A DNA stretch of 64,000 nt, from NCBI RefSeq assembly GCF_011386835.1, contig NC_088814.1, positions 806,001-870,000 on the forward strand, given 5' to 3'. Source of the stretch: Chrysemys picta bellii. Lineage: Eukaryota. The position numbers and the translations under genes were made by a program. Below, in pieces: positions 37,763-64,000 of this stretch. The notes beneath the pieces are model-generated. The model saw only the letters and a program-made list of their open reading frames with translations. It made no database searches and was not told where the DNA came from. The stretch's first letter is position 1. Each line of letters begins with the position of its first letter.

Positions 37763-44094
<6,332 letters not shown>

Positions 44095-45045: not shown

Positions 45046-45499
45046 GGATAAACCTGCCACGCTGGCCGCTGTTCCTGTGCTTGGGTTTTCCTGCCACACT
45101 GGGGCCCGGTTTTCCAAGGGCCACTGGTGCCCGAGATGTTACCGCGCCCAGGCCAGAGGGCAGCCGGGGCACTCGCCTCTGGGGGCGGCTACGGGCCTGG
45201 CGCTTGCAGGGTCCAGGGGAGACGCTGAGACACCCCCGCCCACAGGGCAGCTCCCCAGGCCAGGCTGATGCCCGGGGTGGGGCAGGTTCATCCCGCCCAG
45301 GTGTGGGGGGGCTCGCCGACCCCCACAAACCCAGACCCATAGGACGGGCCGTGGGTCCCGGGGGACACGTGGGTCACAGGGGGACACCCGTGGGTCCCGG
45401 GGGGGTGAGCTCCAGGGGAAAGCCCATGGACCCTGGGGGGGGGGGGGTGTAGGCAGGCCCATGGCGTCATCCCCCCGCCCCCTCTGTCCCCGTCCGCCG

Positions 45500-45652
45500 G
45501 TCGTCTGTCCCCTCCCGCTCGCCGTCTCCGTCCGCAGCTCGCGTTCACGGGTCGTGTGTCCCCTCCCGCTCGCCGTCTCCGCCCGCAGCTCGCGTTCGCC
45601 GGCCGTGTGTCCTCTCCCTATCGCCGTCCCCTTCCGCCAGCTGTCTGTCCCC
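45500..45652. repeat. Three 51-bp tandem units just upstream of the AARSD1 ATG
   Basis: tgtcc(c/t)ctccc..tcgccgtc recurs at 45506, 45557 and 45608. Confidence 0.8.
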
Positions 45653-45672
45653 TCGCGGCGCCGGCTGCCGTG

Positions 45673-48600
45673 ATGGTGTTCCAGTGCCAGCGGGACAGCT
45701 GGGCCCGGCAGGTGCGGGAGCCGCGGGGCGGGGTCGGGGCGGGACGGGGGCGGGGGCGCGCGGGGCTCCCACGCGTGACACGCGCGTGCCGGGCCCCGCG
45801 TGACGCCCCCCGTTTTGCAGTTCACCACCAGGGTCGCGTCGTGCCGCCCCGCGGAGCTGCCGGCCGAGGGCGGCGCGAAGGAGCCGCTGCGGGGCTTCCA
45901 CGTGGTGCTGGAGGACACGATTCTCTTCCCCGAGGGCGGGGGCCAGGTACGGGCTCGTGGGGGCGGGGCCGGTCCGGTCCGGTCCGGTCCGGCACCGGGG
46001 GGGGGGCAGCTGCTGACCGGCGGCTGACCGGACGCTCCTCCCTGCAGCCCGACGACCGGGGACTCATCGAGGACATCCCCGTGCTCCGCGTGACCCGGCA
46101 GGGCCCGGCCGCTGTCCACTTCGTGCAGACGCCGCTGGAGCCGGGCCGCGAGGTGCTGCTGACGGTGGACTGGGACAGGCGGTTTGACCACATGCAGCAG
46201 CACTCAGGTGACCCGCTTTGGCCCCCAGAGAATATGGTTCCTGGGGTGCCAACTTTGTACTCCCCCCAAACCAAACACCCCTGCCCCGCCCCCACTCACT
46301 CCATCCCCCTACCTCTGTCCCCATCCTCACTCACTTGGCTGGCCCAGGGGGTTGGGGTGCGGGAGGGGGGAGGGCTCCGGGGTGGGGCTGGAGATGAGGG
46401 GTTTGGGGTGCAGGAGAGGGCTCAGGGTGGGACCGAAGGGTTCAGAGGGTGGGAGACAGCTCAGGGCACACGGGGAGGGAAGGTGAGCGCTCCGGCTGGG
46501 GGTGTGGGCTCTCAGGTGGGGCTGAAGGGTTTGGGGTGCAGGAGGGGGCTCCAGGCCTGGATTGAGAAGTCTGGAGGGGGATCAGGGATATCAGTGACTC
46601 CTTCCGTAGGTGATGTGGCTAGTGACCACTTAGTTTTCTCTATTGGGGGGGCTGAGTTGCTGGGTTCTCTGGGGCATTTCTGGAACTCTTGAGAAGGTAA
46701 GTGCTATCCTTGCAGGTGCTGTCGTGGGTTATAAACAAATAATTTTAGAAGACTTGGAGCAGAGAGATGCTGTCTGATTTCTGTTAGTCTTAAAGGTGCC
46801 ACAGGACCCTCTGTTGCTGTCTGATTTGAACTCCTCTCAACAGGCAGTCACATACTTTCGTTCCCAGGGATGGCTGGGGGAGTCGTTCTGTGTGTGTGCA
46901 TGCGTGCGTGCCTAGCACTAGTAAAAATAAACTAAAACCTCACAGCCATTGCTTGCACTTCGCTTCCAGGGCAGCATCTCATCACGGCCCTTGCAGATCT
47001 GATGTTTGGATTCAAAACAACTTCATGGTGAGCAGGAAAAGTGTTCCTTTTAACTCTGTCCTTAAACCTTGTTTGGCTTGTGCCACAATGCTGGGTCCTG
47101 AGGGATGAATGTAGATAAATGCATGGAGCGTGGTATGCAGAGACATTCCACTCAGCTGCAGAAGGCATGGGAGAAGTGACTGCACTGGAGAGAAGCTGTG
47201 TGGAGCATTGCTGTGCCTCTCTGTTCCCTTCTCTCCGAAACACAAGCACACATCTGGTGTGATGTAAACAATATACACAGAGAGAGCGAGAGAGAGAGAG
47301 AGAGCGTGCACACATGTGCTTTGCTCCAGTAACAGAATTCCAAGGTGCTTCCTCCTGCACCATGCCCAGTGTTGCACAGAGCGACTTTTGAGCTTGTGTC
47401 CTCTGTTGTATTGGCAGGTGTGTCTGATGTTTGTGGTCCTTGCAGGGAGCTAGGCCATCAGCGCACTGTCATCGAGCTGGACACGCCCTCTGTGACAGCA
47501 GAACAGGTGGTGGCCCTAGAGGAGAACGTGAATGAGAAAATCCGGGCCCGTATTCCTGTGGTGGTGAGGGAGCACTCTGAGGACGACCCAGAGATCGAGA
47601 CGGTGAGTAGCAATGGAGGACGCTGGCAAAATTCATTCCAGAGCCATGTGGGGTAGAGGGGAATATGCCACCCAGTCTCCTTTTAGTCCCAGGGACGTGA
47701 GTTGCAATGCTCATCTTTCTGGATCTCTTGCTAGGTGAGAAGCCGTGGTTTGCCAGATAACCACACAGGGCCAGTGCGCATCATAAGCATCGAGGGCATA
47801 GACGACAACATGTGCTGCGGGACTCATGTCTCCAACTTAAGTGACCTGCAGGTAAAGACCGCACTGCTTCAGCGCCTTCAGTACTCAGGCACCGTCCTGT
47901 AGATCAGCTGGTACAGTAGGAGTCCCTGGATCCGCAGGACTTGCAGTCCCTCTGCAGATTGTCCCTGTTGGACAGAGAACCCCAATCACAAGCCAGAGTG
48001 AGAGTGGTGGGACACAGCCCTGCACCCTGTGGTTACCGTTGTCCACTCACATCCCCCCACACCACTGCATTAGTGAGGGTTTGCCACCAGTGAACAATCC
48101 CCGGTGTTCTTCATGCAGAATTAGATGAAAATTTAATTCCAGAGCTGCCTCTGGGTTTCAATGTCCTTACAGTCAGCTTGATAAGACAAATGACCCTTCC
48201 CTGCCTGTTGGCATGCCTGGTGCGCTGTGGGGTGGGATATTAGGGTATAGAAGGCTTGTTGACACACCAGGTCCAGGCCCGTTAGACAGCATGGCACATG
48301 GCTAATGCATAATGGCACATGGCTAATGAAAGTGTCTCATCTATTTTTTGGCTATATTTGAAGGCTGATTTCAGTGGGTTTAATTCTGATGATAGAAAGT
48401 CGACATTCACAATGACACATGGTCTAATGGACCTTTAGCTGTGTGTAACACACCATTGTACCTCTCTGATCAGGGTGTTTGTTTCTCGTTTAAGGTTATT
48501 AAGCTCCTTGGCACAGAAAAGGGAAAAAAGAACAAAACCAACTTGGTCTTCCTGGCAGGAAATCGAGTACTGAAGTCTGTCGAGCGAAGTCACGGCACCG

Positions 48601-51317
48601 AGAAGGCACTAACCTTGCTGCTTAAGTAATGTCCTTTCCCAGTTTCCCCTTTCCTTGCTTCTCCTCGTCCAGAGAGGAACAGCATGTGACCCTAAAGAGG
48701 GCATTTCTAGCCCCTGGCTCTGGTGTTATGTTGTCTGCTGCAGCTTCATTGGTGGAGCCCTCTCTGTCCAGCGCCTTGACAGCCCAAACTCTGCCTTGTT
48801 TTTTTCCAGAAATGGAGCAGAGGAGCACGTGGAGGCTGTGAAGAGGCTGCAGAATTCTGTGAAGCTGCTTCAGAAGGTACGGCTGTGGCCCAGAGGTCAC
48901 TCCATCGAGGGTCTGAGCTTTGGTAACAGCAACAGTGTTCTGAATAATCTTATTTCACGAGAATTAAATTTTAGAATCTCCCTTGTGTTGACCCTGGAAG
49001 CGGTGAAAATTGTGACTCCACCTGTCTCAGGAAACTCCATCCCCGACTCCACTCCACCCCATCCCTGTGTTCTCGCGCTGACTCCAGGGTCTGCAACATG
49101 GGGTTTGCTTTCCTTGCAGAACAACTTGAACTTGCTTAGAGACCTCGCCGTTTTGACAGCACAGAACTTCAAAAGCAATCCGGTCCGAGGCCGAGTGTTT
49201 GTGTTACACAGGTAAGGCCCAGATGCGGGGAAGGGGCTCGGGTGCTGCAGCGTCTAACTGGCAGATTCTAAGACCAGAAGGGAGCACTGTAGTCTGAATT
49301 CCTGTATAACACAAGCTGACAATGTCCCATGGCAGCTGCCTCCCTCTGCCGTGCATTCAGGGCTGTTTATAACAGACGTCCATTCTTTAAGGGGGAACAT
49401 AAACTAAGGAAACGGAATATTAAACCAACTGTCTGGGCCTGCTGGAAAGGCTCGTAATTAAAGTCTAACATGTTTGTATTTTGGCTGTTGAACGCTGCTG
49501 GTTTTAGAGCCGAGCAGTACATTTGTTTGCTTATCCCTCCCTGCTGGTGGTATTGTCAAAAAAATGGCAGCACTCCATTGGTTACAGAGTAAACACTAAT
49601 AATTCATCATTTGTGGGTGGGAAACATAGAAAGGATTTTTCTGTATAAATTGCTAATCGCTGTCCTAATGATGAGAGGCCACAGCCCTGACCCTCGGCAC
49701 AAAGCACGCTCACCTCGGGTCTGGCTTCCAGTTCCCTGACAGTGGTTGATAAGAAGCTGGTGGGAAATTTGACTCTAAAAATCAACCAAAAGCCAAGCCA
49801 GCACAATGTCTGGTCTGTGTGGGGTGTTTGGTTTCCGGCTCCGTCATAGAGTTTAGGCCAGAAGGCCTTCACCACCAGAGGTATGTCTGGATTCTCTAGG
49901 CCGGGGCATCTCTGAAATACCTTTTACCCTTTACAGGAAAGACGGTGACTCTGAGTTCATGAATATCATCGCCAATGAGATCGGGACAGAGGTGAGCGCT
50001 CTCTGGCTTGTCCTCGCCCCTTGTTGGCCCTTTGGCCTCCTCTAAGGCCTATGTAGCCTCTCCCCACCCTTGACCAGCCCTCACAATACACTGGCCAGAA
50101 AACAAAGGCCTCGTTCTCCCCAGAATGTTGCAGCCCAAACTGTTACCACATCGGTGCCCCCCAGCTGTGATCTGGAGGGGCCCCGCCTGTCCCAGGGAGG
50201 TGTGCCCTTCCTGTTGATCAATGGGCCAGTTAGAGCCAAACGTGGGAAAGGTCCTTGTGCTCCAGACACGGGTCTCCCCCCAGCTCATTTAACACAGGGG
50301 TCACCAGACACCAGTCACTGCCTCCCAGGACCGTGTGGGGCTTGTGACCTGGACAGTAGCCCATTTCCGACCCCCCGCCAAGGTAGGTAGTGCTCCAAAC
50401 AGTCTCCCCCCCAGCAACCTGTTCACAGCAAAGAGGAGGGGTGTTCTTACTCACATCTGGGACTCCCAAGTCTCACTGATCGAAGGGGGGGATGCAGAGA
50501 TGTTCTGCAGTAGGATCCATCTCTCTTCACAGGACACCCTGCTCTTCCTGACCGTGGGAGACGAGAAGGCAGCTGGGCTCTTCCTTCTGGCTGGGCCCAG
50601 TGAAGTGGTTGAAAAATTAGGCCCCAGGTAAACTGTTCTGTGACCCCCTGTAGTCCGGCAACCTTCCTGACCAGCGTGGGGACTATCAGCGCTGTCAAGT
50701 CAGCCTCCAGCCTAGTTATTGTCCAAACACCCAGCAAACTCACAAAAGGAAAATAAAACTTCTAGCTGGAGATTTCTACCCAGCCGGGGCATCGCACCTG
50801 GAGCATTCCTTCTCCAGCAACATCCTGCTGCTTCTGCAGTCTGTCAGCTCTTCCCCCCGGCCCGCCCAGTTCTTGCAGCTCCTTATAGCCACCACCTGTC
50901 CTCTGATTAGCCAGCTGGGCTGCCTGGCACCAGGCCTTTGGTCCTTAAAGGAGCAGGCTGCCCTGATACACACCTGCTACGCTACAATTATTATTAATGA
51001 AGGGAAATGAAGTTCTGGCTGCTTTAATCAGATAATTGATTTCACTGGCATCTGGCTCAATATCTGAGGCAGGGCAGCTGGGCCATTTCCCTCCTCTGCC
51101 CCCCAGGCACACCCAGTTTGGGGCTGTGAAAGAGAGCACACCCAGCCCTCCTGGTTTCAGCATGTGGATCTGTCCCTTTAGAGTGGCGGAATTGCTGGAA
51201 GGCAAAGGAGCCGGGAAACGGGACCGCTTCCAAGGCAAGGCGACCAGGATGAGCAGGCGAGCAGAGGTGCAGGCCCTGCTCCAGGACTTCATTGGCCACC
51301 AGACCCTGGAGGAGTAA
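45673..51317 (+). CDS. AARSD1: Alanyl-tRNA editing protein (AlaXp), 410 aa
   Basis: Exons 45673-45711, 45821-45946, 46048-46207, 46970-47027, 47446-47602, 47735-47851, 48495-48625, 48810-48876, 49120-49211, 49937-49991, 50533-50627 and 51182-51317 total 1233 nt. Motifs FPEGGGQPDD, HMQQHSGQH and CCGTH are present. Confidence 0.97.
46235..46660. mobile_element. Probable turtle DNA-transposon fragment with G-rich internal repeats
   Basis: Begins ggggtgccaactttg and contains repeated ggggtgcaggag(a/g)gggctc units. Boundaries are uncertain. Confidence 0.45.
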
Positions 51318-51400
51318 GGACCAGCCCTCGCCAGAGGATTCCCCCATCTGCTGCTCAGTGACCTGGGACGACAGGGTCACTTGCTGACTCCCTCTAGACG

Positions 51401-51406
51401 AATAAA
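51401..51406 (+). terminator. AARSD1 polyadenylation signal (AATAAA)
   Basis: aataaa about 85 nt after the stop codon. Confidence 0.8.
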
Positions 51407-52149
51407 AGTTGTGTTACGAGAATGATGTGTGCACGCGCAGAGCCCTGACGACCAAGCTCTGACCTCAAACCGGGTCCTGTGGCTCCGGGATATGCCAGGG
51501 AGGTTGGGTGGGGAGAGGAGCAGGGAGTGTCCGGTGTATTTGGGCAGGGGGCTGACGCCCTCTGTTTCTCACTGGCCTGGCCATGATGTTGCAAACTTTC
51601 CCCAGATAAACGGTACAACTAGCTTCGTTAACTGGACGCTTCCTGGCGCTGACATTCTTGGGCCAGGGCTGGGGACCACGCTGCCAGGCAGAGCTCCTTT
51701 GCCATCCCTCATGGTCCAGCCTCCAGCAAACCCAGGGAACATTGTGCTGTAAGCCATGATCCTTGGCTTTTGCCTCCTTTGCCATTGGTGGCCAGTACCA
51801 CCCTTGAAAAGCAACAGGCGGTGACTGCAGCGTGAGCGGGTTTATTCCGGGTTACTGGGACCAGTACAAACACCCCTTTACCTGTACTCGGGACAGAATA
51901 TGGGAAGAGGGAAGTTAATCCCAGTAGGGGCCTGGGCTCTGACAATTGCTAACCGTTACAGAGAAAAACGCCGAGGTAGCTCACAGGAGTCCCTAGTCAG
52001 GATCCTGTATGCGCTGCCCTCCAGATGAGGGACACGCCTGCAGGAGCCCGAGTGATAGATGTAGGATGTTGCATCATCATTCATGTTGGCCAAGCAGTTT
52101 TCACTTTAACCAGGGCAACAGGAAACCTCGGGGGGTGAGGGGGATGCAA

Positions 52150-52342
52150 TGTTATGGCAGGAATCAAAGGTGAGACTGGCTCATGCTGGTCTCTGTCACC
52201 CTGCCTCGCAGAGCTGGGACCAGATGGGGAAGTGGGTGAAGAAGGGTGATATTGGCAGTCAAGAGGAACCAGTCCTGGGAGTTCTGGAGGAAGCGATCGC
52301 CTGGATCCCTGCCTCGTGCAGGACATTCATGCCGGCCTCCAT
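52150..52342 (-). pseudogene. Relic exon 1 of a G6PC1 gene
   Basis: The minus strand translates, across two frameshifts, as MEAGMNVLHEAGIQA / RFLQNSQDWFLL / FFTHFPIWSQLCEA. It shares accagatggggaag and aagaggaaccagtcctgg with exon 1 of the intact gene. The first frame stops after 27 codons and exons 2-5 were not found. Confidence 0.88.
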
Positions 52343-52387
52343 TCTTTGCTGATGCTCTGAAGCCACTGCAGGTGCTGGAGGGTTTAA

Positions 52388-52545
52388 CCTGTTTATGCTG
52401 GTGCTGCTGGACTGTGCTGGTTAACACACAGCGTGGGGTCCGGCCTGGCTGCACATGTTATCACTGACCTCTGAACTCAGCAGCCACCTCTGCCAACCTG
52501 GCGCTGACCCAGTTACAAACCTGACGCAAGTGTTTGTCAAAATGT
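52388..52545 (-). promoter_or_regulatory. Retained proximal promoter of the G6PC1 relic
   Basis: TATA-like cataaa at about 52392-52397, perfect DR1 AGTTCA-G-AGGTCA at 52465-52477, tgacgcaa at 52522-52529, and forkhead-like tgtttg at 52531. Confidence 0.6.
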
Positions 52546-54128
52546 GGCCTGGCATTACCTTGAAACGATGAAGCAACATCTTGCACCATACAGACAAACA
52601 GGGATTGCAGCGCTCGTGCTTCTGCCAGGGTGGTCACTAGCCGCTCGGTGATCCCTTGGATTCACAAAGGACATGTAACCCTTTGCTCACTTCAGGTACA
52701 TGTAGTCTAAGGATCTGTTCAGCTGGCAGGCAGATTGGAGAATACCGGCATTTGGAGTGTTAATCTGGCAGCTAGGTCTTGGGGACATCTCTGCACAGAA
52801 GGAGTCTGCATCCCTCCTGCTGGCCTTGAGTTTCATCTTTATTTATGCGCCTGCAGTGACGCAGTGTCTCTCCAACAGCAGCCTACATTTCTAATTCCTG
52901 GTCACAGCAATGCAGGTAACGTCTCAGCAGAGACCAAATTTCAGCCTGTTGTGTGACATCGGCGCTGCTAGCAAACCAGCCAGGTGGGTTTGTTACGATT
53001 CTGAAGGCTGGGATTACTCACTGCATTGCACAGCAGAGGTAGCAAGAATTAGGGCTGGGCCTGGCAGTGAGTGGGATCTGGGTTTCTAACACACTTAGGA
53101 AAATTGCAGCTGGAATCTCATGTCTGAGAGATACCCAACTGCTCCCAGGGGAGTGGTGGGGGCTCACGGCTCTCCAGCATCCCTCGCTTGTGGGCAGGAA
53201 ATGAGCGGTGCTCCCTCCTGTTCTTGCTGTTCTGTGCACGCTCTACGCACCTCGCTCTGATTAGTGAAAGTTACTGATAACCGGTCAGGAGCCACTCTGA
53301 GGCTGTTCATGCATGAGGCTGAATCCTGTGCCAGTTCCGATTTCCTGCATGGATTTGTGTCCCTGTCCCCCGCAGTATGGGGTTTTTGTCCTATGCTTGG
53401 TCTGTGGTGATGGGGCTGGAGGGAGGGAGGGTGGTGATGGAAGCCTGAAGCCTTGTGTGAGCATAAAGCTAATGAGAACCAAGATCTATGGGATCTGTCA
53501 GCGTGGTCAAATACCCAGGCTATCTGGCCACACTGCATGCAGGCAAGCAGCTCCTGGAATGGACATTCAGCTTTCAAACCCAAATGCCTTAAGTCAACCT
53601 CCCCACCCCATACATATCTTGCTGCTGGAACTTCCCCTGCCACTGAACACATAGCTAATTCCAGGCATCGGCCCTGACTCCTGATCTGAGCCACGGGCGC
53701 AGAGATCTTCCCCGTGCCAGGGAGCGTGGCCAGAATGGAGTGGTTTCTCGCTCTCCCCGGTCAAGGCCCTGCCCCTGCACAGAGCGATCGGTAGGACACC
53801 AGGTGCGCTGTATTGGGCCCATGGTAGGAAGCGGGAGACAGACCACCATTGCTCTGGGCCTGAAATGGAAACCTGAGCTCTGCAAGCGGAGAAGCTGAAC
53901 TTTGGCCTTGTTCATGCTTGGTGTCAGTCACTAGGAGGATGCCTGGAACGGGGAAAGCCGGGCCGGGCCGGGGCACACACTGCGACAACCCCCTACAGCA
54001 GGGCTCTGTGTTGTGCAGCTACGCCAGCATTCACCTCGACAGAACTCCCAAGTGCAGAATAGGGGCCTGAGGCTGCTCCTCCCACAGCCATGGCCCTGCT
54101 GCTGCCCCTCACTTCCTGCCTTCTAGAC

Positions 54129-54529
54129 CAGTGGTTCTCAACCTTTCCAGAGCCCTGTACCCCTTCCAGGAGTCTGATTTGTCTGGTGTACCCCAAAGTT
54201 CCACCTCACTTAAAAACGACTTGCTTACAAAATCAGACATCAAAACACAAAAGTGTCACAGCACACGAGTACTGAACAATGGCTGACTTCCTCATGTTTC
54301 CCATATATAATAAATCAAGTGGAATATGAAGAGTGCACGTACATGTCAGTGTATAGTCTATAGAGCAGTATAAATAAGTCGTCGTAGGAAATTTTAGTGT
54401 GTACTGACTTTGCTAGTGCTTGTTATGTAGCCTGTTGTAAAATTAGGCAAATCTCTAGATGAGTTGATGTTCCCCCGGAAGAGCTCTGTGTACCCCCAGG
54501 ATGTGTGCGCCCCTGGTTGAGAACCACTG
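54129..54529. mobile_element. hAT/Charlie-type MITE
   Basis: TIRs cagtggttctcaacc / ggttgagaaccactg. TSD ttctagac / ttctagaa. Confidence 0.9.
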
Positions 54530-55511
54530 TTCTAGAATGCTCCCCTCAGCCAGACAGGGACTGGATAACTGCCCTGGTCTGTTCATTCCCCCGCAGCATC
54601 CGGCTTCGGCCCCGTCAGAGACAGGACATGGGGCTAGATGGTCTGGCCCTTTGTGTGACGCTCTCTTGGAGAGCTCTGGGTCCCTGTATCTCTGGAGGGC
54701 CCACAGGGGCAATGAGCAGAGGTTGCCCCATCAGTAAGATGGCCTGAGGGTGGGAAAGGCTGAGTGGAATTTACTAATTTTATTGCCAAAGGCATTTCAC
54801 AGCTAGCGCCTGTCCCTCGGCCTGGGGCCCATGGGTGCCGCCCAGCTGTAACAGCCTGGTAACACGCAGACACACCCACGCCTACGGCACTCCTTGCAAC
54901 CTCAGCACAGCTTTCCCGCGCTGGGAGCCCATGGACACGCCATCCCTGCTCTGCTGGGGCCGAGTTGATTGACAGCACTGCTGTTCAGTGTGGCCATAGC
55001 CAAACGCATTAGCCCAGAGGGGACTGAGCCATAAGATGGGTAGGTGCCGACTGTTCCCCGCTCTGGAGAGCGTTTGGTACGTTGTAGTGTAAGAGGCTGA
55101 CAAGGTGGCCGAGAGCCGAATTCTGTGTGGGACATCTCCCCCTCAGCTGTGGCTATACCCTCGGCTGGGACAGCGTTCCTGACCGCCCCGTTATCTACTC
55201 ACACTGCCTAGAGCAGAGGTTACCATGGGCTGGGCCAGGGGCTGTGGCCGAACGAGGACCCCATTACATTTCACCCTGTGCAGCACTGAGGTGTGTGATA
55301 GTCACTCACTTCCTTTCCCACACAGGAGACAGTGAACTTCCCCTTCAACTTCACGGCACTGAGCCGATCACGTAACCCAGAGCTGTGAGGTCTGTGGTGC
55401 CGGGAGACCTGTTACTGCAGTGGGAAAGGGAAGGGGGAGCCCTGCAGAGCACATTCCCCTGCCCCGAAGAGCAGCCTGGCTTGGCAGCTACGACGCAAGT
55501 TTGCAGGTCAG

Positions 55512-58500
55512 CTACAGGATCTTCTTGTCACCCCTCCTGAGCACCTGGGCAATGCAGTAGGGGATGAGTGCCACCGCACATAGGTGGGCAGCGGCGCTCT
55601 TGCAGAAGGACAGGACGTAGAACAGTAGCTCTCGGTCTGTGGGGAGGTCGAAGGAGTCGAAGAGGTGCAGGACGAGGAGCGAGGCCGCGATACAGCTCAG
55701 GCGGAAGGGCAGCTGCTGGCCCATCTTCCCTTTGCAGCTCTCCAGGTACATCTGGGAGTTGAGGGCCAGCCCCAGCCCAAACAGGATGCCCAGGTTTCTG
55801 AGGAGGCCGGCGAAGGGGGTGGTTTCAATGTGGACCCACTCCGGCCGGTCACACCACCTCTTGGCTTTCTCCATGGTCCACAGCAGGTCAACACCGAGAG
55901 CCTTCAGCAGCAGGTAGAACCCCAGGGCGAAGCTGAACAGGAAGAGGGTGGTGCCCAGGTACCGCCGGAGACTGGCGTTGTAGATGGAGTGGATGTGGTC
56001 AAATGCTTCTGCTACTACCATCCCTAGGGGCAGAACAGTCTCTGTAGGTACGTCTACACTGCAGTTAGTGTCGTGTAGTGTATAGACGTTTGGGCCGGGG
56101 CTGGGGCCCATGTTCTAGGGTCCTGCGTGGTGCGAGGATCCCAGAGCTCAGACTGCAGCTGGAGCCCAAACGTCTACACTGCAACTAAACAGCCCCTTAG
56201 CCCGAGCCCCACGAACCGGAGTCAGCTGTCCCGGGCCAGCCACAGGTGTCTCACTGTAGTGTGGACGTACCCTCACTGAGCAGCAAACAGGCCTAGCTGC
56301 AAAATGTACTGGGTGGGCTCGGTGTAGAGAGGCCTTGGGGAAGGAGCAGGAACCAGCTCCCGGTACCAGGTGCTAGGCACATGTAGTGACAGCCCCAGGT
56401 CACCCAAAGTGACTACTAACAATGGGGTGTGCAGAGAACTGGGACCCTCCCTCCAGTGCACTGGGCACCAGGCGCCTGCTGGTTAGCATGTGACCCTGGC
56501 GTGCGCTCGCTCGCTCGCTCTCTAAAGCACCATGCAAAGCAGTGACATCATGTCAGCACTGACTGATGGCATTAGCCGTGCAAGGGGAGGCCGAGCCCAC
56601 TAGGCCATGGGTTTGCTTCTCCACACTGCCGACGTGGGTACCTGGGGAAAGACGATCACTTTGCCATCGTATTTTGAGTACATGGTGCTCCCAGAGCTGA
56701 GGAGGTACGTCTCCTCCAAGCAGGAGCAAGGCTATCTAGGGCTCAGATCGCCTCTCTGGTCACTGGGCCCTGGAGAGCTGGCGGGTGCTGTGACGGGGGA
56801 GGCAGCCTTGACACTCACCTGAGATGACCCCTGCGATCACCTGATGGGGGAAGTGAGCAGCTAGGAAGACTCGGGACAAGCAGACGCAGACCTGCACGGC
56901 CCAGAACGCAAGCCACAGGAGGCCGCGGAGGCACCTGCAAAGAGACAGCCAGCCAGGAAGGTCGTGGGCGCACAGGGCAAAAGCACTTTAATAAAGCCAC
57001 AAGCGGCCTGTGAATGACGGGAGCCTGCGCGCTGGCTGACTGGCTCCTCTCTAGCTACCACGCAGGAGCAACCGCGCCAGCACAAGTGCCCGTCTCGCTA
57101 GCTAGACAATGAGACCAAGTCTATGGCCTACATGTGTCTGCCACGAGGCCCAGACATAGGAGCTGGGACTGCGGGGACTGGGGTGTGGCAGCACCCCCTG
57201 GCTTGAAAGGGTTTCCTTCCGTTATATCCAGGGTAAGTAGTTTGGGGAAATGGCTCTCAGCCCCCCCACTATACAAACTGTTCCAGCACCCCTGGCCAGA
57301 TGTTAGGGCAACCGAACCAGCGAGCGAAGGCCTTTCCCATGCCTGGTGCCTCCTGCCAGCTGCAGCGCTCAAGCGAAAGGGGCTTTGCCCGGGGCTGGCT
57401 GATTGGACCCACGCAGATCTGCTGCCAGCTGAGAGTCCCCTCCCCTGTGCTGGGCTTGGCTCAGATCCCACAGATGCTGATGCCAGTTGCTGGGCAGTAA
57501 CTCGGTGTGATGCAGCAATGGGCGCCGCTGATCCGGGTGCAAAAAGCCCCAGGATATTTCCTTTCGCTCCAGCTCTTGGGGGCTTCGCACGTCCCACTTC
57601 TCATGTATCTCCCGGGCCCAGACATAACACGGGGCAGGAATTCATGCTGACCGGGAAGGGGGGGCATTTACCCACAATTCCATTAGTCATCCTCCATTTT
57701 GCCTTGTCACCCGTGGGACCCTCCTCAGCAGGGTGAAACGATCCCCTCCCCAGGGCGGCAGCAGCAGGTGGAACCGGCTCACTCGGCCCACTCACCCAAA
57801 CGGATTGTGGGTGGGGGCCCCTGCAGAGCACCCCCCTTGTGGCCTGGGATGGCCCCGCCAGCTCGGCTCCCTCTGGGTTCTCCGTACTGACACCCAGACC
57901 CCAGGAGTGAGCGCAAGAGCCCCTGTTGTGCAGCCTGATTTCTTACCTCTCTCCGAAAGTGCTAAGCTTTTCTTTAGGCCTGCGAGTCCAGCCCTCCTGC
58001 CCCCTCAGGCCTCCCACCGCCTCCTCTTCAGAGCTGGGCTGATCCGGGCTAGTTACCGCCTTCAAGCTGCTTCCCCCAGCTGGCCCCTCTGCACTTAGTC
58101 CTTTCACCCCTGGGCTGGGAGACGGCAGCAGGCAGGCTCCTCACCTTGCTGGTGTCTCCCCTGTGATGAGGGAGGAGGCAGCACCCTCCTTCCCAGGGCT
58201 CCTCCCAGCTGGCTGGGAGAAGGGACCCGTCCCATCCTCGCTACCAGGCTCTGGTCCTGGGCTCATAAAGAAACAATAGCCTGGGTTTCCCCCAAGCACT
58301 GACTGTTCCTCCAGGACGAACCATCTCCCTTTCTCCCAAGTCCCAACACCTGCTGATGCCCTTCCCTTTGTCCTCCTCTGCTCCCAAAGTCCCAGGAACC
58401 CTAAAGGGACACACTATGGAGCAGACTGACCCCTATTCCCCTTAAGGGGACAGTCACCCTGTTATAGGTATCAAGTCATGGGCAGTAAAAACCTGTCCTG

Positions 58501-59510
58501 TTCTGACTAACACAGAGCCAGGCCCAAGCCACGGGCCACGAGAAGGCCCTCAGGCCACAAGGCCCTGCTCACCTGGCTGCACAGGATCTGTGCTGGGTGC
58601 CCTGGACGCAGGGCAGCAGGGCCGTCACCATGACGTAGTAGACTCCAGCAGAACCCATGGCGTGGCCTGAGGGGCTTCCTGTGGAGAAGACCCAGTCCCG
58701 ATCAGTTAGAAGGGAGAGAAGCCAGGGAGGAAGTTGCAGTGAATCTGAGGGGTTTAATAGCGGGAACCTCACCTGGGCCGGTCTCACAGGTGAGAGGGAA
58801 CTGCTGGATCACAGGGGTGGAGGCGTTGCCATAGTAACCGGTCTCATGGACCCACCAGTAGGGTCTCTGCCCAAAGAGGATCCTGTAGTGAAAGGAGAAA
58901 GTGACAATGGCAGTGCGGGGCCTGGGGCATGTCACGTACCCTGCAGCGCGGATTCCCGGGGGCGGTGGAGCCCTGGCTGCCCTACGCTGAGGGCTGTCGG
59001 GAGGACTCTGTGGGGGCAAAGCGCTGGCTCCATAACTATCATGATTTACTCTTCTTGCCTTTTCAGCTCACTTATTAATTCAGCACCGGCCTCTGCTTTA
59101 CCAGCGGTAAAGTGACTTGCTCAGAGTCACAGAGCTAGTCAGTGGCAGAGCCCAAGTGTCTTGACTCCCAACCCTGTTCCTCAATCCCAAACCCAGCCTT
59201 CCTCTCAGAGAGGCTACTTCAGACCCTGGGAGGGGTTGGAAACAGCCCCAAACTGCAGCACTCCACAGCTGCTTCTCAGAATCCGCACTCACCACTTAAA
59301 GACCAGGTTGAGCCAGTCCCCGATCACGGCCACCCAGATCAGCTTGACGCCCACCGCCTTGCAGAGGTGGAACCAGATGGGGAAGAAGATGAAGAAGGTG
59401 GTTTTAAGGTCGGCAGCGAAGGAGATGAAGAGGAACCAGTCCTGGAAGCCCTGGTAGTTCTCCTGCAGGTACTGCACCACCTGCACCCCAGCACTGTGAA
59501 GCAGGTCCAT
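55512..59510 (-). CDS. G6PC1: Glucose-6-phosphatase catalytic subunit, G6PC1-type (copy A), 353 aa; orthology among tandem copies unresolved
   Basis: Exons 59510-59293, 58882-58773, 58678-58573, 56934-56819 and 56023-55512 total 1062 nt. PAP2 motifs KWILFGQRP, PSGH and SRVFLAAH are intact, an NAS sequon is present, and the C-terminus is KKIL. Confidence 0.95.
56046..56272. mobile_element. GTCTACACT-ended MITE 21 nt from the last acceptor of G6PC copy A
   Basis: TIRs ggtacgtctacactgcag / ctgtagtgtggacgtacc. Confidence 0.85.
59085..59190 (+). mobile_element. MIR/CORE-SINE fragment
   Basis: aagtgacttgctcagagtcacagagctagtcagtggcagagc. Confidence 0.7.
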
Positions 59511-59578
59511 TATGGCTCCTGGTTGTGTCTCTTTGGATCCCGTTGTTTGCACTGACAGCTTTGTGAAGCCTGCTGCTT

Positions 59579-59623
59579 CTTATACCCTGCCAGCCTTAAC
59601 TCTTTTATGACATATGCAATGAT
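59579..59623 (-). promoter_or_regulatory. G6PC copy A promoter: TATA-like and HNF4-like site
   Basis: TATAAG at 59579-59584. aggatcaaagatca (CAAAG core) at 59610-59623. Confidence 0.5.
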
Positions 59624-62344
59624 CTTTGATCCTGAGCCACCCCAGCCAAAAACTATTGACAGAGCCAGAAATCTGGAGCAAACTGCCTGTACCCTCATCC
59701 CCAGGAATCAATATCCCTCATTTCAGAATTTCCCTCTGGTTACTCCTGGGCGTGTGGGTGTCACTAGGGGAAAGGGCTGAAAGTTGGGGAGTAAGGCAGA
59801 GAATTGCACAAAGGCTACAACGAGCTAATTTGGTGTCACTGTTTTAAAAACAAAGACAGGTTTGGTTGGATGTTAACCTGCCTCTCCAGGAGAATGATGG
59901 GCTAGAAAACAGACACCAGTAGGGCATGAATCTGTCCCATTTCTCTGAAATCTGTTACTGATTGTTCAGACTAAATGCATTTTAAGGGTCAAATCCTCAA
60001 CTGGAATAACTGGGCATAGCTCCGTCAACTGCAATGGAGTTACGCTGAGCACCCTAAAGCTGTAGGTTGAGCTTTGGGTAAAGCAGGTTGTTTTACTTGT
60101 ATTTATTCATTTGTTTGACAGGTCAAATGCAGATTTCCCATGGTTAGAAATGCAGCTGTGCCCTGCTTTACCCCTTAGACCTTCTCCAGATCGAGATGCG
60201 TCAGCTGGTAGCGCTCACACCTCTGGGCTGAGGGAGGTGGCTGAGTTCAAGTCCAGTTTATTGTTGCTGCAAAGGTGAGACCAAACCCTGGTCTCTTACA
60301 GTCCCAGTTTGCACAGAAAATGTGCCTCCCACAGAAGGTGTCTACATGAGGCAGAAGATACATACTGGGCCAACTTCTGATCTCAGTTATGACTCCACTG
60401 AAGCTATGTGTTTGCTCTGGATTTGCCCGGAGTGTAACTGAGATCACCAGCTGGCTGAAAGTTTACATCCAGGGTTGCTCTGGGAAGTGTGTCATGTAGT
60501 GCTAGGATTCCCAGTGCAGGACATGTGTGCACATGTGTGCAGCCCAGTGTCCACTGAGAAAGAAGTGAATGATCCAAGTGTAACTCCGTCCCTGTCTCCC
60601 TTCTTTGCTTGTCCCTAGTTGGGAGGCAGCTGATACTGATCTTTGTTGAGCACCCAGAATATTCCTGGCTGTACAGATGTGTGCTCCATTGAGATGAGGG
60701 AACACAACATGCACCAAAAACACAGAAATGTCTTCTCCAGCTGCACTTTTTCTACTAGGGCAGGCCAGATGCTTGTGATCCCAGCTGCGGAAACATTAGG
60801 CCTCAGTAGGTGATTTGTGGAAGGATCTGTGTCAAGGCACGAGGCAAAAGAGTACATGTTTGATGGTAAAAAGCCGAGGAAAAAGGAATCTCCCAAACAA
60901 TGTGATTCTTGAGCTATATTTAATCCCCAAAACCATGTGGGAAATACAGAAACTAACAACCCGGGAAGAAAACCCCCAACCCATCCACGGGGAAAGAAGG
61001 AGCCGATGTAAACAAGCAAGACAGCAACGGCCCATGGCACACTCAGGATTTCCACACCGGTCCCTGCAGTGGTTACCAGCAAACAGGAAAACAGCTCAAT
61101 AGGTGGCGGTGAGGGGCAGTTTGTGACGCAGCAGGATCAGAGTGGGGGTCAGGGCTGTGCATGCCATCGACTCGTGACACTTTGCTGGAGAAGTAACAGG
61201 AGATAACAGAGAAAATAAACATGTTCCCTCCCCTCCCATTCAGATCTCACTGTTCCACTTGTGCAGGGATCTTACCACTTAGTGTCTCTTTTCAAACTCT
61301 TAGGTCTGAGTAACTCAGGCAAAGAAACCTCAAGCCAGTAACAGATTGAAAAGAAACCATACATTGGTAAGTTCCCTGCTCTGGCAGGAACTTTCATCCC
61401 ACAAGTGATCAGGGCAGACCTGTGCCCAAGTGGGCAGGAGTTTTGTGATATGACCCTCAGGGTTGGTTATTTCCCAGCAGGTCTGGAATCTCGTGTGTCC
61501 CCTGGTGAGGGCAGGGAGACACTCATGAAACCTGGTATCAAGGGCTGCATGAAACAACTGCCAACACCCGCTGAGCGCTCCTAGGAAGCAAGCTACAGCT
61601 TGTATCTCAGGCAAAATCCAAATGTAAATATCTCACTCCAGGGTTACAGCACAAGCCCAGTGCATGCTGGGATACGGGGAGGGGGGTACTAGTTTCAGAA
61701 AGGTGACACACACGTTATTTGCACAGGTTGTAAGGGTCAGCTTCATCATGGTGCTACTCCAGGTTTATGCTGGTGTAAAAGCCTTGAGAACAAAGCCACA
61801 ATACTGGGACACCATGGTGACTGCGAAAGCCAATCGCCCTTCACTCACTGCACACGGAGTTAAGGCTTTGCGTAGGTCTGTGTCACATGTCTCAGCACCT
61901 CAGTGAGAGCCCCGGCTTGTACAGTTCCTACAATTCCCTTTTCTTTCTGCTTAGCGTATGGCAGAGCGGCATGTGTGCACAGCTGTGTGCATGGGGGTGC
62001 AAGGACCATGCCGGGGTCAGGACCACCTTCTACTGCATGAGCGGGGCCAAGGGTAAAAACCAAACCACGCTTCTTTTCTCAAACGCCCAGTGTAAAGCAA
62101 ACCCTCACCTCCAAAAACCCCTCCGCGCCAGGTTCACAGGACTCTCGCCTCACCCACCCGCGTCTCTCAGACAATTCTCCGTGTCTTTCAAGGTCATGTA
62201 GTTTGTGCAACTGGCACAGAAGAGCCAGCCTGTGCCACATTCAGGTTGCATTGGCTCTGTGACACAGCACCACAGAGCAGTCACAGGCCTGGCGGTCAGG
62301 GCTGGGAACTAGAGGCAGCCAGTCCCATGCAGCTCTGCTCACTC

Positions 62345-62856
62345 TCATAAAAGCTTTTCCTCCTGCCTCCTGATGAGCCGGGCGATACAGTAGGGGATGA
62401 GGCCGGCAGCAGCCACGGGCACGGCCGCGCTCTTGCAGAAGGACAGGACGTAAAACAGCAACTCCACCTTGGTGGGAGGCTTGAAGGAGTCGAAGAGGTG
62501 CAGGATGAGGAGCGAGGCCGCGATACAGCTGAGGCGGAAGGGCAGCTGCTGGCCCATCTTCCCTTTGCAGCTCTCCAGGTACATCTGGGAGTTGAGGGCC
62601 AGCCCCAGCCCAAATAGGATGCCCAGGTTCCTGAGGAGGCCGGCGAAGGGGGTGGTGTCAATGTGGACCCACTCCGGCCGGTCACACCACCTCTTGGCTT
62701 TCTCCAGGGTCCACAGCAGGTCAACACCGAGAGCCTTCAGCAGCAGGTAGAACCCCAGGGCGAAGCTGAACAGGACGAGGGTGGTGCCCAGGTACCGCCG
62801 GAGACTGGCGTTGTAGATGGAGGGGATGTGCCGGAAAGCTTCCGCCACAGCCATGC
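62345..62856 (-). CDS. Last coding exon of a second tandem G6PC1-type gene (copy B); upstream exons lie beyond the window
   Basis: Acceptor cccttatcag| at 62856. The exon is 512 nt, the same length and phase as copy A exon 5, and open to TGA. It reads GMAVAEAF...SFCKSAAVP...RRQEEKLL*. Confidence 0.88.
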
Positions 62857-64000
62857 CTGATAAGGGAGACAGACATGTCAGCGATGCAGGAAGGAGTCAA
62901 GGTACCAAAGCCCAACCCTGTCCTTCACACAACAGACACTCTTCCCGCTTTCCCTGCCTGGGCTGCCGTTACCCGCTGACAGCAAGGCTCCGGCCTGTTT
63001 GCAAAGTGTGGGGAGAAGCGGCGGTTAAAGGCCTTCCAAGGCACCTGGGAGACAATCGCTGGAGGAAGAATTCTGCTGACTCAGCAACGCCCAGGTTCCC
63101 ATTTCCCCCAGACCGGCTGCGGAGCCGCTGGGCACGATGGGGGCGATGACAGACGACAGGTCTGGCGTCGAGGGGGGGAGCAGCAGAAGGCCATAAGGAA
63201 GGAGGCTCCTGTTCCCATGACAATGCCCCGAGCCATAACCATCCTGCCCTTCTCCTTCCCTTTGACCTATTTCTGCAGGGCCGGACTCCGAGCCCTTCAA
63301 CCCAAGTGGCGGCCCAGGGGTCACCACAGGGCTCCCAGTGGGGCCCATAGGCCGTGAGCTCTATGGGGCGGGGACTGGCTCTGCTGTTTGCGCAGCGCAG
63401 CAGGGCTGCGTCTCAGCTGGGGGGTACCACCGCAATGCATATCGATAATAATAACAGCACAAAGCAGAGGGAAATGGACCAAGGACTCCTGGCTGCCCCG
63501 TCTCTGTTAGGCTTTGGGGTCGTTAGCTGCTCGGCCAAATTCCAGCAAAAAGCCTGGCACAGGCCTGGGGCCGGGCACATTTTCAGCTGTTTATCTGAAG
63601 CCAGATAATTAGAAGCCAACACCCCGTCCCCCCAGCCCCAGCACTGGGCAAGGGAGAAGGGGGGTTCAGAGGGTCCCCTGCTCCCTTTCCCTGCATCAGC
63701 CCCCTCGTCCCTCTGCTGCGCTTGCCCAGTTCCAATCAGACTCTCCCCACCCGGCTCCTCTCTCTGTCGCTCCCTGCCCCTCTCCTGCCCAGCCTGGCAG
63801 CGAGTGAACGCAGGCGGGGACAGGGCTGCCCAGCGACGCCAGAGAGCGCTGCCCTTCCATGGCAAAGAACCACCGGCAGGCACTCTGTGGGCTTTAACCC
63901 CGCGCCTGCTGAGCCAGACCGCAAACCTGTTTTCCCACCTCTGACAACAGAAGCACTTGGTTTCTTACAAGGGAATAACATGGAAACTTCCCAGAGCTGC

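What the first reader, a model, noticed from the sequence alone, without database searches (positions are those of the whole stretch)
52150..52342. Dead G6PC1 relic that looks like the true orthologue of mammalian/avian G6PC1
This is absent from the ORF track. An exon-1 remnant next to AARSD1 encodes MEAGMNVLHEAGIQA, then after indels QNSQDWFLL and FPIWSQLCEA. The first frame ends at TGA after 27 codons, and there are only about 750 bp before the AARSD1 polyA signal, with no recognisable exons 2-5. Recalled knowledge: human G6PC1 starts MEEGMNVLHDFGIQ and is the gene flanking AARSD1, whereas intact copy A here starts [10 protein letters not shown]. Inference: the canonical gluconeogenic G6PC1 orthologue was lost in this lineage and glucose release depends on other tandem paralogues.
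Basis: partly seen in the sequence, partly recalled or inferred. Interest (0 to 1): 0.85.

Follow-up and report, generated by a model that had tools for sequence, protein, structure and literature searches.

The report
Ancient dead G6PC1 exon-1 fragment
This is a real but very old dead fragment (degenerate promoter region plus first exon) of an extra copy of the glucose-6-phosphatase gene, stranded next to AARSD1 and probably carried inside the 3' UTR of a working neighbour copy; turtles still keep an intact canonical G6PC1 further upstream, so the gene was not lost.

Summary
On the minus strand at 52342..~52195 lies a frameshifted G6PC exon 1 (MEAGMNVLHEAGIQAI / LQNSQDWFLL / FPIWSQLCEA) with a stop after 27 codons. 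It has no exons 2-5, and it ends 743 bp from the AARSD1 AATAAA.

The interpretation does not hold. Turtles carry three intact tandem G6PC1-type genes:
- T1 has the canonical MEAGMNVLHD start.
- T2 is the window's copy B.
- T3 is the window's copy A.

The order is T1-T2-T3-relic-AARSD1, and T1 lies beyond the window's right end. T1 is intact in Chrysemys picta, whose T2 matches copy B exon 5 at 169 of 169 residues. It is also intact in Emys and in eleven further listed turtle species.

The relic is old. It sits at the same place in Malaclemys, Emys and the pleurodire Emydura, and all share a 13-nt frameshifting deletion. A degraded counterpart lies between the intact G6PC1 and AARSD1 of the ostrich. 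So the relic is not the orthologue of avian G6PC1. It is a dead extra copy of the canonical type, older than the bird-turtle split.

RNA-like contigs from three runs place it inside a ~3.7 kb 3' UTR of copy A. That UTR ends at an AATAAA conserved in all four turtles.

Verdict: an ordinary ancient pseudogene fragment. Interest is low.

The parts
52150..52342 (-). Relic of G6PC1-type exon 1. It is recognisable from ATG 52342 to about 52195. Relative to intact T1 exon 1 it has a 13-nt deletion after codon ~16, a 14-nt deletion in codons ~33-41, and has lost the last ~50 nt of the exon. A TGA follows codon 27.
52343..52560 (-). Degenerate 5' UTR and promoter-like flank of the relic. It keeps a CAGAGGTCAGTG motif that aligns with the CAAAGATCAG element of G6PC promoters, but the TATA box is destroyed. 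The stretch 52405-52355 is the only non-exonic piece that still aligns with the ostrich locus.
51841..51846 (-). AATAAA on the minus strand, ~350 nt downstream of the relic. It is the likely poly(A) signal of the copy A (T3) mRNA and is conserved in all four turtle genomes compared.
51801..55511 (-). Inferred long 3' UTR of copy A (T3) that contains the relic. RNA-like contigs of three runs cover it continuously and stop at 51801-51883. They are absent or nearly absent from 51400-51800.
   Evidence: tables 2, 5, 8
55512..59513 (-). Copy A is the intact T3 paralogue (353-aa type, starting [10 protein letters not shown]). Exon 1 is 59513-59292, exon 2 ~58881-58771, exon 3 ~58679-58580, exon 4 ~56930-56817 and exon 5 56021-55512.
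62345..64000 (-). Copy B is the T2 paralogue (357-aa type). Only exon 5 (62854-62345) and part of intron 4 are in the window. Exon 5 is 100% identical to Chrysemys picta XP_005310109.2.
45673..51425 (+). AARSD1, convergent with the G6PC array. Its stop is at 51315-51317 and its AATAAA at 51402-51407.

Best explanation
The feature is a non-functional remnant of a fourth tandem G6PC1-family copy. What survives is a degenerate promoter-proximal region, exon 1 and, in Emydura, the exon-1 splice donor. Its coding sequence is of the canonical T1 / mammal / bird type.

The copy sat at the 3' end of the array, next to AARSD1. It was inactivated, and its exons 2-5 were lost, before the last common ancestor of living turtles. 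The copy itself predates the bird-turtle split. It has since drifted neutrally.

In turtles it is now passively transcribed as part of the ~3.7 kb 3' UTR of the T3 paralogue (copy A). The canonical gene T1 is intact further upstream in the array T1-T2-T3-relic-AARSD1. No loss of canonical glucose-6-phosphatase is implied.

Shown here: the relic, its lesions, its synteny in four turtles and the ostrich, the intact T1 in relatives, and the order of the array.

Inferred: that it was once a complete gene, the 3' UTR reading, and that it has no function.
For: Identity and type:
- A T1-only DNA profile finds the relic at E 1e-22 to 1e-28 in four turtle genomes, always between T3 and AARSD1.
- Nucleotides 1-54 of the relic are 79% identical to turtle T1 and 77% to gharial T1, against 50-56% for T2 and T3.
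- It shares N6, I13 and A15 with T1-type proteins. T2, T3 and the frog, salamander, lungfish and sturgeon proteins mostly have D, V and M/V at these positions.

Age:
- A 13-nt frameshifting deletion is shared by the emydids and the pleurodire Emydura.
- Emydura still keeps the 3' end of the exon and a GCGAGT relic of the donor site.
- A turtle-only relic profile hits the ostrich between G6PC1 and AARSD1 at E 1.7e-13. blastn also finds this match, at 78% over 51 nt.

Intact T1:
- Chrysemys P0276 has five exons in L002.
- The Emys array is T1, 8.35 kb, T2, T3, relic, AARSD1.
- The T1 cluster lists 13 turtle species.
- Copy B exon 5 is 100% identical to Chrysemys T2.
- In the protein tree T1 groups with mammal, bird, crocodilian and lizard G6PC1 at 91/82, T3 with lizard 353-aa genes at 98/97, and T2 forms its own clade at 99/96.

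Neutral decay:
- Window-versus-Emydura identity at the relic is 0.67-0.85 per 100 nt, within the range of the surrounding intergenic DNA, which is 0.69 overall with other peaks of 0.80-0.85.
- The relic is not detectable in the kagu.

3' UTR:
- The contigs of runs X9, X16 and X17 show spliced joints, so they behave as RNA.
- They cover 51801/51840/51883 up to ~55670 without a break, including one 3295-nt contig.
- They cover introns and 51400-51800 barely or not at all.
- The AATAAA at 51846-51841 is conserved in four turtles.
Against: - I could not read the window's own genome beyond coordinate 64000. The intact T1 is shown in relatives and in the species that best matches the window, not in this very assembly.
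- Contigs cannot prove the strand, the ends or the continuity of one transcript. The 3' UTR reading is therefore an inference.
- Nothing survives of exons 2-5. 'Once a complete gene' is argued only from geometry: a simple unequal crossover leaves an orphan first exon upstream of a gene, not downstream.
- The promoter type is undecided. Promoter-only profiles give no hit for T1 and only a weak hit for T3 (E 1e-4).
- The exon-1 tree is unresolved.
- The relic's upstream flank is the only non-exonic stretch alignable between turtle and ostrich. That could hint at some constraint.
Confidence: 0.8

Rival explanations
1. The relic is the one true orthologue of mammalian/avian G6PC1. The canonical gene was lost in this lineage and glucose release relies on the paralogues A and B.
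For: The relic has the canonical N-terminus and lies next to AARSD1, as G6PC1 does in mammals (from memory) and in the ostrich and kagu. Copies A and B fall in separate clades, T3 and T2.
Against: - An intact T1 with the canonical N-terminus and a strongly conserved promoter exists across turtles, including Chrysemys and Emys.
- T1 groups with mammal and bird G6PC1.
- The ostrich has both an intact G6PC1 and a relic counterpart.
- The relic's lesions are older than crown turtles. A lineage-specific loss is therefore excluded.
Confidence: 0.03
2. Hidden paralogy. The T1/relic duplication predates the mammal-sauropsid split. Mammals kept the AARSD1-side copy, which corresponds to the relic lineage. 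Sauropsids kept the AOC-side copy, T1. The relic would then be the strict orthologue of mammalian G6PC1 even though T1 does the job in reptiles.
For: The relic occupies the AARSD1-adjacent slot. The duplication is at least as old as the bird-turtle split. The exon-1 tree cannot exclude this reading.
Against: - The relic shares A3, A11 and A15 with sauropsid T1. Eutherians have E, F and S there; at position 3 the marsupial Dromiciops has A.
- The T1 promoter carries a TTACGTAA / AACATGTTTGCATCAAC / CAAAGATCAG / TATAAA arrangement that I recall from the human G6PC1 promoter (the human part is from memory).
- In mammals the single gene is also adjacent to AOC, as T1 is (gharial and birds).
Confidence: 0.07
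3. The fragment was co-opted. Its promoter-like flank, or the relic itself, would now act as a regulatory element: a 3' UTR element or terminator context for T3, or an enhancer for the cluster. That would explain its survival for more than 250 Myr.
For: The relic's upstream flank is the only non-exonic blastn match between the turtle region and the ostrich locus. It is well conserved between Emydura and the emydids, at 0.81-0.85. The relic lies ~350 nt upstream of a conserved poly(A) signal and inside an expressed UTR.
Against: - Other stretches of the same intergenic region are equally conserved among turtles.
- The element is undetectable in the kagu, the gharial flank and Sceloporus.
- The exon part carries different lineage-specific deletions in the emydids and in Emydura.
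- Turtles and ratites evolve slowly, from general knowledge, which by itself can explain the survival.
Confidence: 0.08
4. Partial duplication. Only a promoter plus exon 1 segment was ever copied to this place, so there never was a fourth functional gene.
For: No trace of exons 2-5 is found in any of the five genomes that hold the relic. Only 0.3-0.9 kb separates the relic from the neighbouring 3' ends.
Against: An unequal crossover leaves an orphan first exon upstream of a gene, not at the 3' end of the array (inference). A later deletion of everything downstream of the start of intron 1 explains the data equally well. The evidence does not discriminate between the two.
Confidence: 0.3

Closest known systems
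Human G6PC1 (glucose-6-phosphatase catalytic subunit 1; PDB 9J7U/9J7V)
   Same: The relic's conceptual pieces align to residues 1-16, ~20-32 and ~45-56 of exon 1 ([30 protein letters not shown]). Copy A exon 1 aligns to human residues 5-77 at E 3.5e-30. The convergent neighbourhood with AARSD1 is the same (the human arrangement is from memory).
   Different: The relic is frameshifted, ends in a stop after 27 codons, and lacks exons 2-5. It therefore lacks all PAP2 catalytic motifs. It shares 11 of 16 N-terminal residues with human, against 13-14 of 16 with crocodilian and turtle T1.
Turtle T1 gene (e.g. Chrysemys picta XP_005310110.2, Emys orbicularis XP_065278732.1)
   Same: They share the N-terminal type (MEAGMNVLHD.GIQAT), the orientation, and membership of one tandem array. 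Nucleotides 1-54 are 79% identical.
   Different: T1 is intact, with five exons, 357 aa and a conserved TATA/CRE-like promoter. It lies at the AOC-side end of the array, whereas the relic is at the AARSD1-side end and is dead.
Duplicated g6pc genes of sauropsids and amphibians described by Marandel et al. 2017 (PMC5414149)
   Same: That paper records 1-2 g6pc genes in reptiles, birds and amphibians, all belonging to the g6pcb/G6PC1 lineage.
   Different: The paper attributes the duplicates in anole, finch and Xenopus to lineage-specific events and mentions no turtles and no pseudogene. Here T3 is shared by turtles and lizards, T2 by turtles and the gharial, and there is an additional dead copy.
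Non-processed (duplicated) pseudogene fragments in tandem gene arrays
   Same: There is genomic, not retroposed, structure: an upstream G6PC-promoter-like flank, an exon boundary with a donor-site relic, and a position at the end of a tandem array. Decay by indels looks neutral.
   Different: It is unusually old and still recognisable, because turtle and ratite sequence changes slowly. It is also embedded in the 3' UTR of the neighbouring paralogue.

Membership tests
Functional G6PC1 gene (PAP2-type glucose-6-phosphatase catalytic subunit) | Uninterrupted reading frame through exon 1 | tested here: not met
   The frame is broken by 13-nt and 14-nt deletions, and a TGA follows 27 codons.
Functional G6PC1 gene (PAP2-type glucose-6-phosphatase catalytic subunit) | Exons 2-5 carrying the phosphatase motifs (RPYWW, PSGH, HFPHQV region) | tested here: not met
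   A motif scan and tblastn find these only in copies A and B. Nothing is found between 51.4 and 55.5 kb at E<=1.
G6PC1-family exon 1 (homology) | Significant similarity to exon 1 of intact G6PC1 genes at a syntenic place | tested here: met
   tblastn gives E 2.5e-6 and the T1 DNA profile gives E 9.6e-28. The relic holds the same position in Malaclemys, Emys and Emydura.
Canonical (T1 / mammal / bird) G6PC1 lineage | N-terminal extension MExG and the residues N6, I13, A/S15 (MNVLH..GIQA/S) | tested here: met
   The relic reads MEAGMNVLHEAGIQA. It matches Pelodiscus T1 at 14 of 16 residues and gharial T1 at 13 of 16. T2 and T3 have D6, V13 and M/V15.
Canonical (T1 / mammal / bird) G6PC1 lineage | Groups with T1 in a phylogeny | tested here: inconclusive
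   The exon-1 DNA tree is unresolved. A relic+T1 clade is neither supported nor rejected (p-AU 0.47). Gene conversion among the turtle paralogues is evident in the 3' two thirds of exon 1.
Canonical (T1 / mammal / bird) G6PC1 lineage | T1-type promoter (TTACGTAA, AACATGTTTGCATCAAC, CAAAGATCAG, TATAAA) | tested here: inconclusive
   The T1 promoter-only profile gives no hit. The T3 promoter profile gives a weak hit (E 1e-4). Only the CAGAGGTCAGTG element is recognisable and the TATA box is gone.
Unitary pseudogene (sole orthologue lost in the lineage) | No intact orthologue remains in the genome or lineage | tested here: not met
   An intact T1 is present in 13 listed turtle species. These include Chrysemys, the best match to the window, and Emys, where it lies in the same array.
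Processed (retroposed) pseudogene | Intron-less copy of an mRNA that continues into exon 2 sequence, with a poly(A) tract and a position away from the parent | tested here: not met
   Homology stops at the exon 1 / intron 1 boundary, with a donor-site relic (GCGAGTG) in Emydura. The upstream flank resembles a G6PC promoter. The relic lies in the parental tandem array.

The most novel reading that the evidence does not exclude
The relic may be the last trace of a four-member G6PC1 array (T1-T2-T3-psi) that already existed before birds and turtles split. T2 is shared with crocodilians and T3 with lizards. Both would then be ancient sauropsid paralogues lost in birds, not lineage-specific duplicates as the literature assumes. 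In the strongest form of this reading, the dead copy next to AARSD1 is the positional counterpart of the mammalian gene (hidden paralogy).
Probability: 0.35. Interest if true: 0.4.

Novelty: new member of a known kind. Interest (0 to 1): 0.22.

Why it matters
The main value is corrective. Read alone, the window suggests that turtles lost the canonical gluconeogenic G6PC1. The comparison shows that they did not, so no unusual physiology needs explaining.

Two by-products have modest comparative-genomic interest:
- There is a datable pseudogene fragment, older than crown turtles and probably older than the bird-turtle split. It shows how slowly neutral DNA decays in turtles and ratites.
- Sauropsids appear to have had an old array of three G6PC1 paralogues, differentially retained. 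Turtles keep three, the gharial has at least two, a lizard has at least two, and birds have one. The published view of lineage-specific duplications does not capture this.

Turtles are anoxia- and freeze-tolerant animals in which glucose output matters. A division of labour among T1, T2 and T3 would be worth an expression study.

Tried and rejected
- PDB search with the frame-3 piece alone gave no hit at E<=10, because the piece is too short.
- Within-window blastn of the relic region against copies A and B found only 85 nt of exon similarity and no flank similarity. The relic is therefore not a recent local duplicate.
- The representative search returned mostly fragments. It served only to obtain a usable query, P0002.
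- Look-ups of Carettochelys and Chelonoidis T3 failed because those isoforms are not the longest product on record. Trionychia and tortoises were therefore not examined for the relic.
- I tested whether the tail between the relic and the poly(A) signal is the 3' UTR end of a G6PC gene. There was no similarity to the 3' flanks of T1 or T2, or to the flanks of the gharial, ostrich or Sceloporus genes.
- I tested for a T1-specific promoter upstream of the relic. An apparent extension of the alignment did not survive promoter-only profiles, so I withdrew that claim.
- The relic profile used included the ostrich row, which made it circular. I repeated the search with turtles only.
- The exon-1 DNA tree with an AU test was uninformative.
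- The idea of functional constraint on the relic was weakened by its absence in the kagu and by equal conservation of neighbouring intergenic stretches.
- Earlier scan notes held nothing for this place or for these words.
- The literature search found no paper in the held library on turtle G6PC copies or this pseudogene.

Full report
**1. The observation**

Reading the minus strand from 52342 gives ATG GAG GCC GGC ATG AAT GTC CTG CAC GAG GCA GGG ATC CAG GCG. This translates as MEAGMNVLHEAGIQAIASSRTPRTGSS followed by TGA, which is 27 codons. The third frame holds LQNSQDWFLLTANITLL, and the first frame resumes with FFTHFPIWSQLCEAG*.

- A tblastn with an intact turtle protein (P0276) finds 52342..52202 at E 2.5e-6. 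It finds no other G6PC-like exon between AARSD1 and copy A.
- A DNA profile made only from intact T1-type promoter plus exon 1 (Chrysemys, Emys, gharial, ostrich) hits 52367..52199 at E 9.6e-28.
- AARSD1 is on the + strand. A tRNA_SAD domain lies at 47735-47857, the stop is at 51315-51317, and the AATAAA is at 51402-51407. The relic's given end, 52150, is 743 bp from that signal.
- Copy A starts [10 protein letters not shown] at 59513, has five exons, and stops at 55512. Its exon 1 aligns with human G6PC1 residues 5-77 at E 3.5e-30 (PDB 9J7U).

**2. What surrounds it: a three-gene family**

A protein search and cluster look-ups show that turtles carry three intact G6PC1-like genes.

- T1 is 357 aa and starts MEAGMNVLHDMGIQATRYLQ.
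- T2 is 357 aa and starts METGMDFIHSSGVQMT.
- T3 is 353 aa and starts [12 protein letters not shown], with LKTTFF.

Copy A is T3. Its exon 5 is 100% identical to Malaclemys P0206 and Trachemys P0290. Copy B is T2. Its exon 5 is 100% identical to Chrysemys picta XP_005310109.2, against 98.2% for Trachemys and 97.6% for Malaclemys. The window therefore most likely comes from Chrysemys picta or a very near relative. Its 18.5 kb from 45491 to 64000 is 97.3% identical to, and colinear with, Malaclemys.

**3. Where the canonical gene is**

In Emys orbicularis the order on one chromosome record is T1, then 8.35 kb, T2, 2.9 kb, T3, the relic, and AARSD1 in convergent orientation. Malaclemys and Emydura show T2, T3, relic, AARSD1 within the DNA fetched.

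In Chrysemys picta, T1 (XP_005310110.2, P0276) is intact with all five exons. It lies on the same 18.0 Mb contig as T2.

The window ends inside T2. T1-type proteins are on record for 13 turtle species in the listed cluster members. These include sea turtles, Mauremys, Gopherus, Chelydra and Macrochelys. Pelodiscus and Pelusios also have one.

**4. Which gene corresponds to mammalian and avian G6PC1**

A 69-protein tree gives the following groupings.

- Turtle T1 falls in one clade with mammalian G6PC1, bird G6PC1, the gharial 357-aa gene and the lizard 357-aa genes (support 91/82).
- Turtle T3 groups with the lizard 353-aa genes (98/97).
- Turtle T2 forms its own clade (99/96).

The root, set by a very long G6PC2 branch, is not trustworthy, so I use only the groupings.

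The T1 promoters of turtles, gharial and ostrich are strongly conserved: TTTTACGTAA, AACATGTTTG.ATCAAC, GGTGATGCACCTTTG, GGGTCCAAAGATCAGTG and GGGTATAAA. From memory, this is the arrangement of the human G6PC1 promoter.

The gharial 353-aa gene has the T2 promoter (75% over 204 nt, E 1e-32). T2 is therefore older than the turtle-crocodilian split. T3 is at least as old as the turtle-lizard split.

In the gharial the order is AOC, T1, T2-like. In Sceloporus, T3 is the gene next to AARSD1. The ostrich and the kagu have AOC, G6PC1, AARSD1 with a single gene. This agrees with the single-copy status reported for birds (PMC6487185).

**5. What type the relic is**

In nucleotides 1-54 the window's relic is 79% identical to turtle T1, 77% to gharial T1 and 67% to ostrich T1. 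It is only 50-56% identical to any T2 or T3.

It shares N6, I13 and A15 with T1-type genes. T2 and T3 have D6, V13 and M/V15, and most of the frog, salamander, lungfish and sturgeon proteins have the same. The relic and T1 therefore share states that look derived, which makes the relic a copy of the canonical lineage.

Further 3' in exon 1 all turtle paralogues are nearly identical to each other, which points to gene conversion. This is one reason an exon-1 tree is unresolved. The relics form a clade (93/91), but a relic+T1 clade is neither supported nor rejected (p-AU 0.47).

Upstream of the relic's ATG there is a degenerate G6PC-promoter-like flank. TTGGCAGAGGTGGCTGCTGAGTTCAGAGGTCAGTG aligns with the region around the CAAAGATCAG element, and the TATA box is destroyed. 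Promoter-only profiles do not say which type it was: T1 gives no hit, T2 gives none, and T3 gives a weak hit at E 1e-4.

**6. How old it is**

The relics of the window, Malaclemys, Emys and the pleurodire Emydura are colinear. They share the 13-nt deletion that shifts the frame after codon ~16.

Emydura keeps parts the emydids have since deleted. These are the codons for ..SFTADIET.., the 3' end of the exon (..GDWL..) and a relic of the donor site, TAAGGGGCGAGTG against TAAGTGGTGAGTG. Emydura also has its own 1-nt deletions and an ATG to TTG change at codon 5. The fragment was therefore already dead in the last common ancestor of living turtles, and it once comprised a whole exon 1 with its splice donor.

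A profile built from the four turtle relic regions alone hits the ostrich at L009 14645-15039 with E 1.7e-13. This lies between the stop of the intact ostrich G6PC1 (12457) and AARSD1 (15551). blastn finds the core, window 52405-52355, at 78% over 51 nt. It is the only non-exonic match between window 44-60 kb and the ostrich locus.

The T1-only profile does not hit that ostrich place. The ostrich element is therefore a counterpart of the relic, not a second T1 promoter.

The copy thus predates the bird-turtle split. Because the ostrich has both the intact gene and the relic, the relic is not the orthologue of avian G6PC1. I found no counterpart in the kagu, in the 10 kb downstream of the gharial T2-like gene, or between T3 and AARSD1 in Sceloporus. 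In those faster-evolving or unsampled stretches, absence of detection is weak evidence.

**7. Whether it does anything**

Identity between the window and Emydura at the relic is 0.67-0.85 per 100 nt. That is inside the range of the rest of the intergenic region, which is 0.69 overall with other peaks of 0.80-0.85. Together with the lineage-specific deletions and the loss in the kagu, this argues for neutral decay in slowly evolving genomes.

Laying contigs of four runs on 51000-56999 gave an unexpected result.

- Three runs show spliced joints and so behave as RNA. The joints remove copy A intron 4 (55997/56022 to 56818) and include the AARSD1 last-exon junction at 51180.
- In these runs, contigs cover 51801/51840/51883 up to about 55670 without a break. 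One contig of 3295 nt spans 51883-55195.
- Copy A intron 4 and the stretch 51400-51800 have little or no cover.
- An AATAAA on the minus strand at 51846-51841 lies just inside that boundary. It is conserved in all four turtles, including Emydura.

The simplest reading is that the T3 mRNA has a 3' UTR of about 3.7 kb and that the relic is carried inside it, ~350 nt before the poly(A) signal. Contigs cannot prove strand, ends or single-molecule continuity, so this step is inferred.

The fourth run is DNA-like and comes from another sample of the same organism. It spans 51193-53192 with 10 differences, and no indel is listed in the relic. Twenty listed runs from eleven studies hold the stretch. 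With three independent assemblies of other species, this excludes a misassembly.

**8. Mechanism and history (inference)**

A canonical-type copy stood at the 3' end of the array beside AARSD1. It acquired a frameshift, and everything beyond the start of intron 1 was lost. The remnant was left in the DNA now read as the 3' UTR of the preceding paralogue.

A simple unequal crossover leaves an orphan first exon upstream of a complete gene, not at the downstream end of an array. This mildly favours 'a complete gene that was truncated' over 'a partial duplication', but no exon 2-5 trace exists to prove it.

Whether the T1/relic duplication happened before or after the split from mammals is open. 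The shared residues A3, A11 and A15 with sauropsid T1, and the T1-type promoter in mammals (from memory), favour 'after'. Under that reading both copies are co-orthologues of the mammalian gene, and only one of them is alive.

**9. Comparison with what is known**

It works like nothing. It is a non-processed pseudogene fragment of a tandem gene family.

- It is not a unitary pseudogene, because an intact orthologue is present.
- It is not a processed pseudogene, because it has an exon/intron boundary and a promoter-like flank and lies in the array.

The published account of vertebrate g6pc evolution (PMC5414149) notes one or two genes in reptiles, birds and amphibians. It treats the anole, finch and Xenopus duplicates as lineage-specific, and it mentions neither turtles nor a pseudogene. 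I found no paper in the held library on this fragment.

**10. Verdict**

The headline inference, that the canonical G6PC1 was lost, is refuted. The thing itself is an ordinary though remarkably old pseudogene fragment. Interest is low. The modest novelty lies in the age of the relic and in the evidence for an old three-paralogue G6PC1 array in sauropsids.

Noticed in passing
L003 9600-10000 versus L001 300-700 and L005 1730-2130: The gharial 353-aa G6PC1-like gene has the promoter of turtle T2 (75% over 204 nt, E 1e-32) and a T2-like N-terminus (..GVQMT..). It has lost the upstream ATG. T2 is therefore older than the turtle-crocodilian split and is not turtle-specific. The protein tree misplaces this gene near the root.
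   Followed up: partly
window 54000-54600: A high-copy interspersed repeat sits inside the inferred T3 3' UTR. Contig depth there is 16,000-50,000 in the DNA-like run, against ~20 beside it, with many partial joints.
   Followed up: no
window 59340-59345 (copy A exon 1, codon in ..HLCKAVG..): Copy A has Lys (AAG) where Malaclemys, Emys, Emydura and nearly all other G6PC1-type proteins have Glu (GAG, ..HLCEAVG..). This may be a species difference or a polymorphism.
   Followed up: no
window 59292-59470; L001, L005, L007 exon 1 of T1/T2/T3: The 3' two thirds of exon 1 are almost identical among T1, T2 and T3 within turtles, while the first ~55 nt differ strongly. This points to gene conversion between the paralogues with a sharp boundary inside the exon. 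It blurs any tree built on this exon.
   Followed up: partly
L007 14397-21040 (Emys): The gap between T3 and AARSD1 is ~6.6 kb in Emys, against ~4.2 kb in Malaclemys and the window and 2.6 kb in Emydura. This suggests an insertion in the Emys 3' UTR region.
   Followed up: no
window 14001-16000: This stretch has 70% G+C and a strong negative GC skew (-0.55), unlike its surroundings. It may be a C-rich repeat or a CpG island.
   Followed up: no
window 37500-38450: Long overlapping ORFs encode proline-rich repeats (..[15 protein letters not shown]..) next to a (CA)n-like microsatellite (THTHTHTH). This is low-complexity repeat DNA, not an evident gene.
   Followed up: no
window 55997/56818 joint: A very abundant spliced contig (depth ~3000 in run X9) carries 25 letters that encode ..MAVAEAFR.. 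at the exon 4/5 junction. That is the T2/T1-type exon 5 start, not copy A's [10 protein letters not shown]1 or T2 paralogue is therefore far more highly expressed than T3 in that sample.
   Followed up: no
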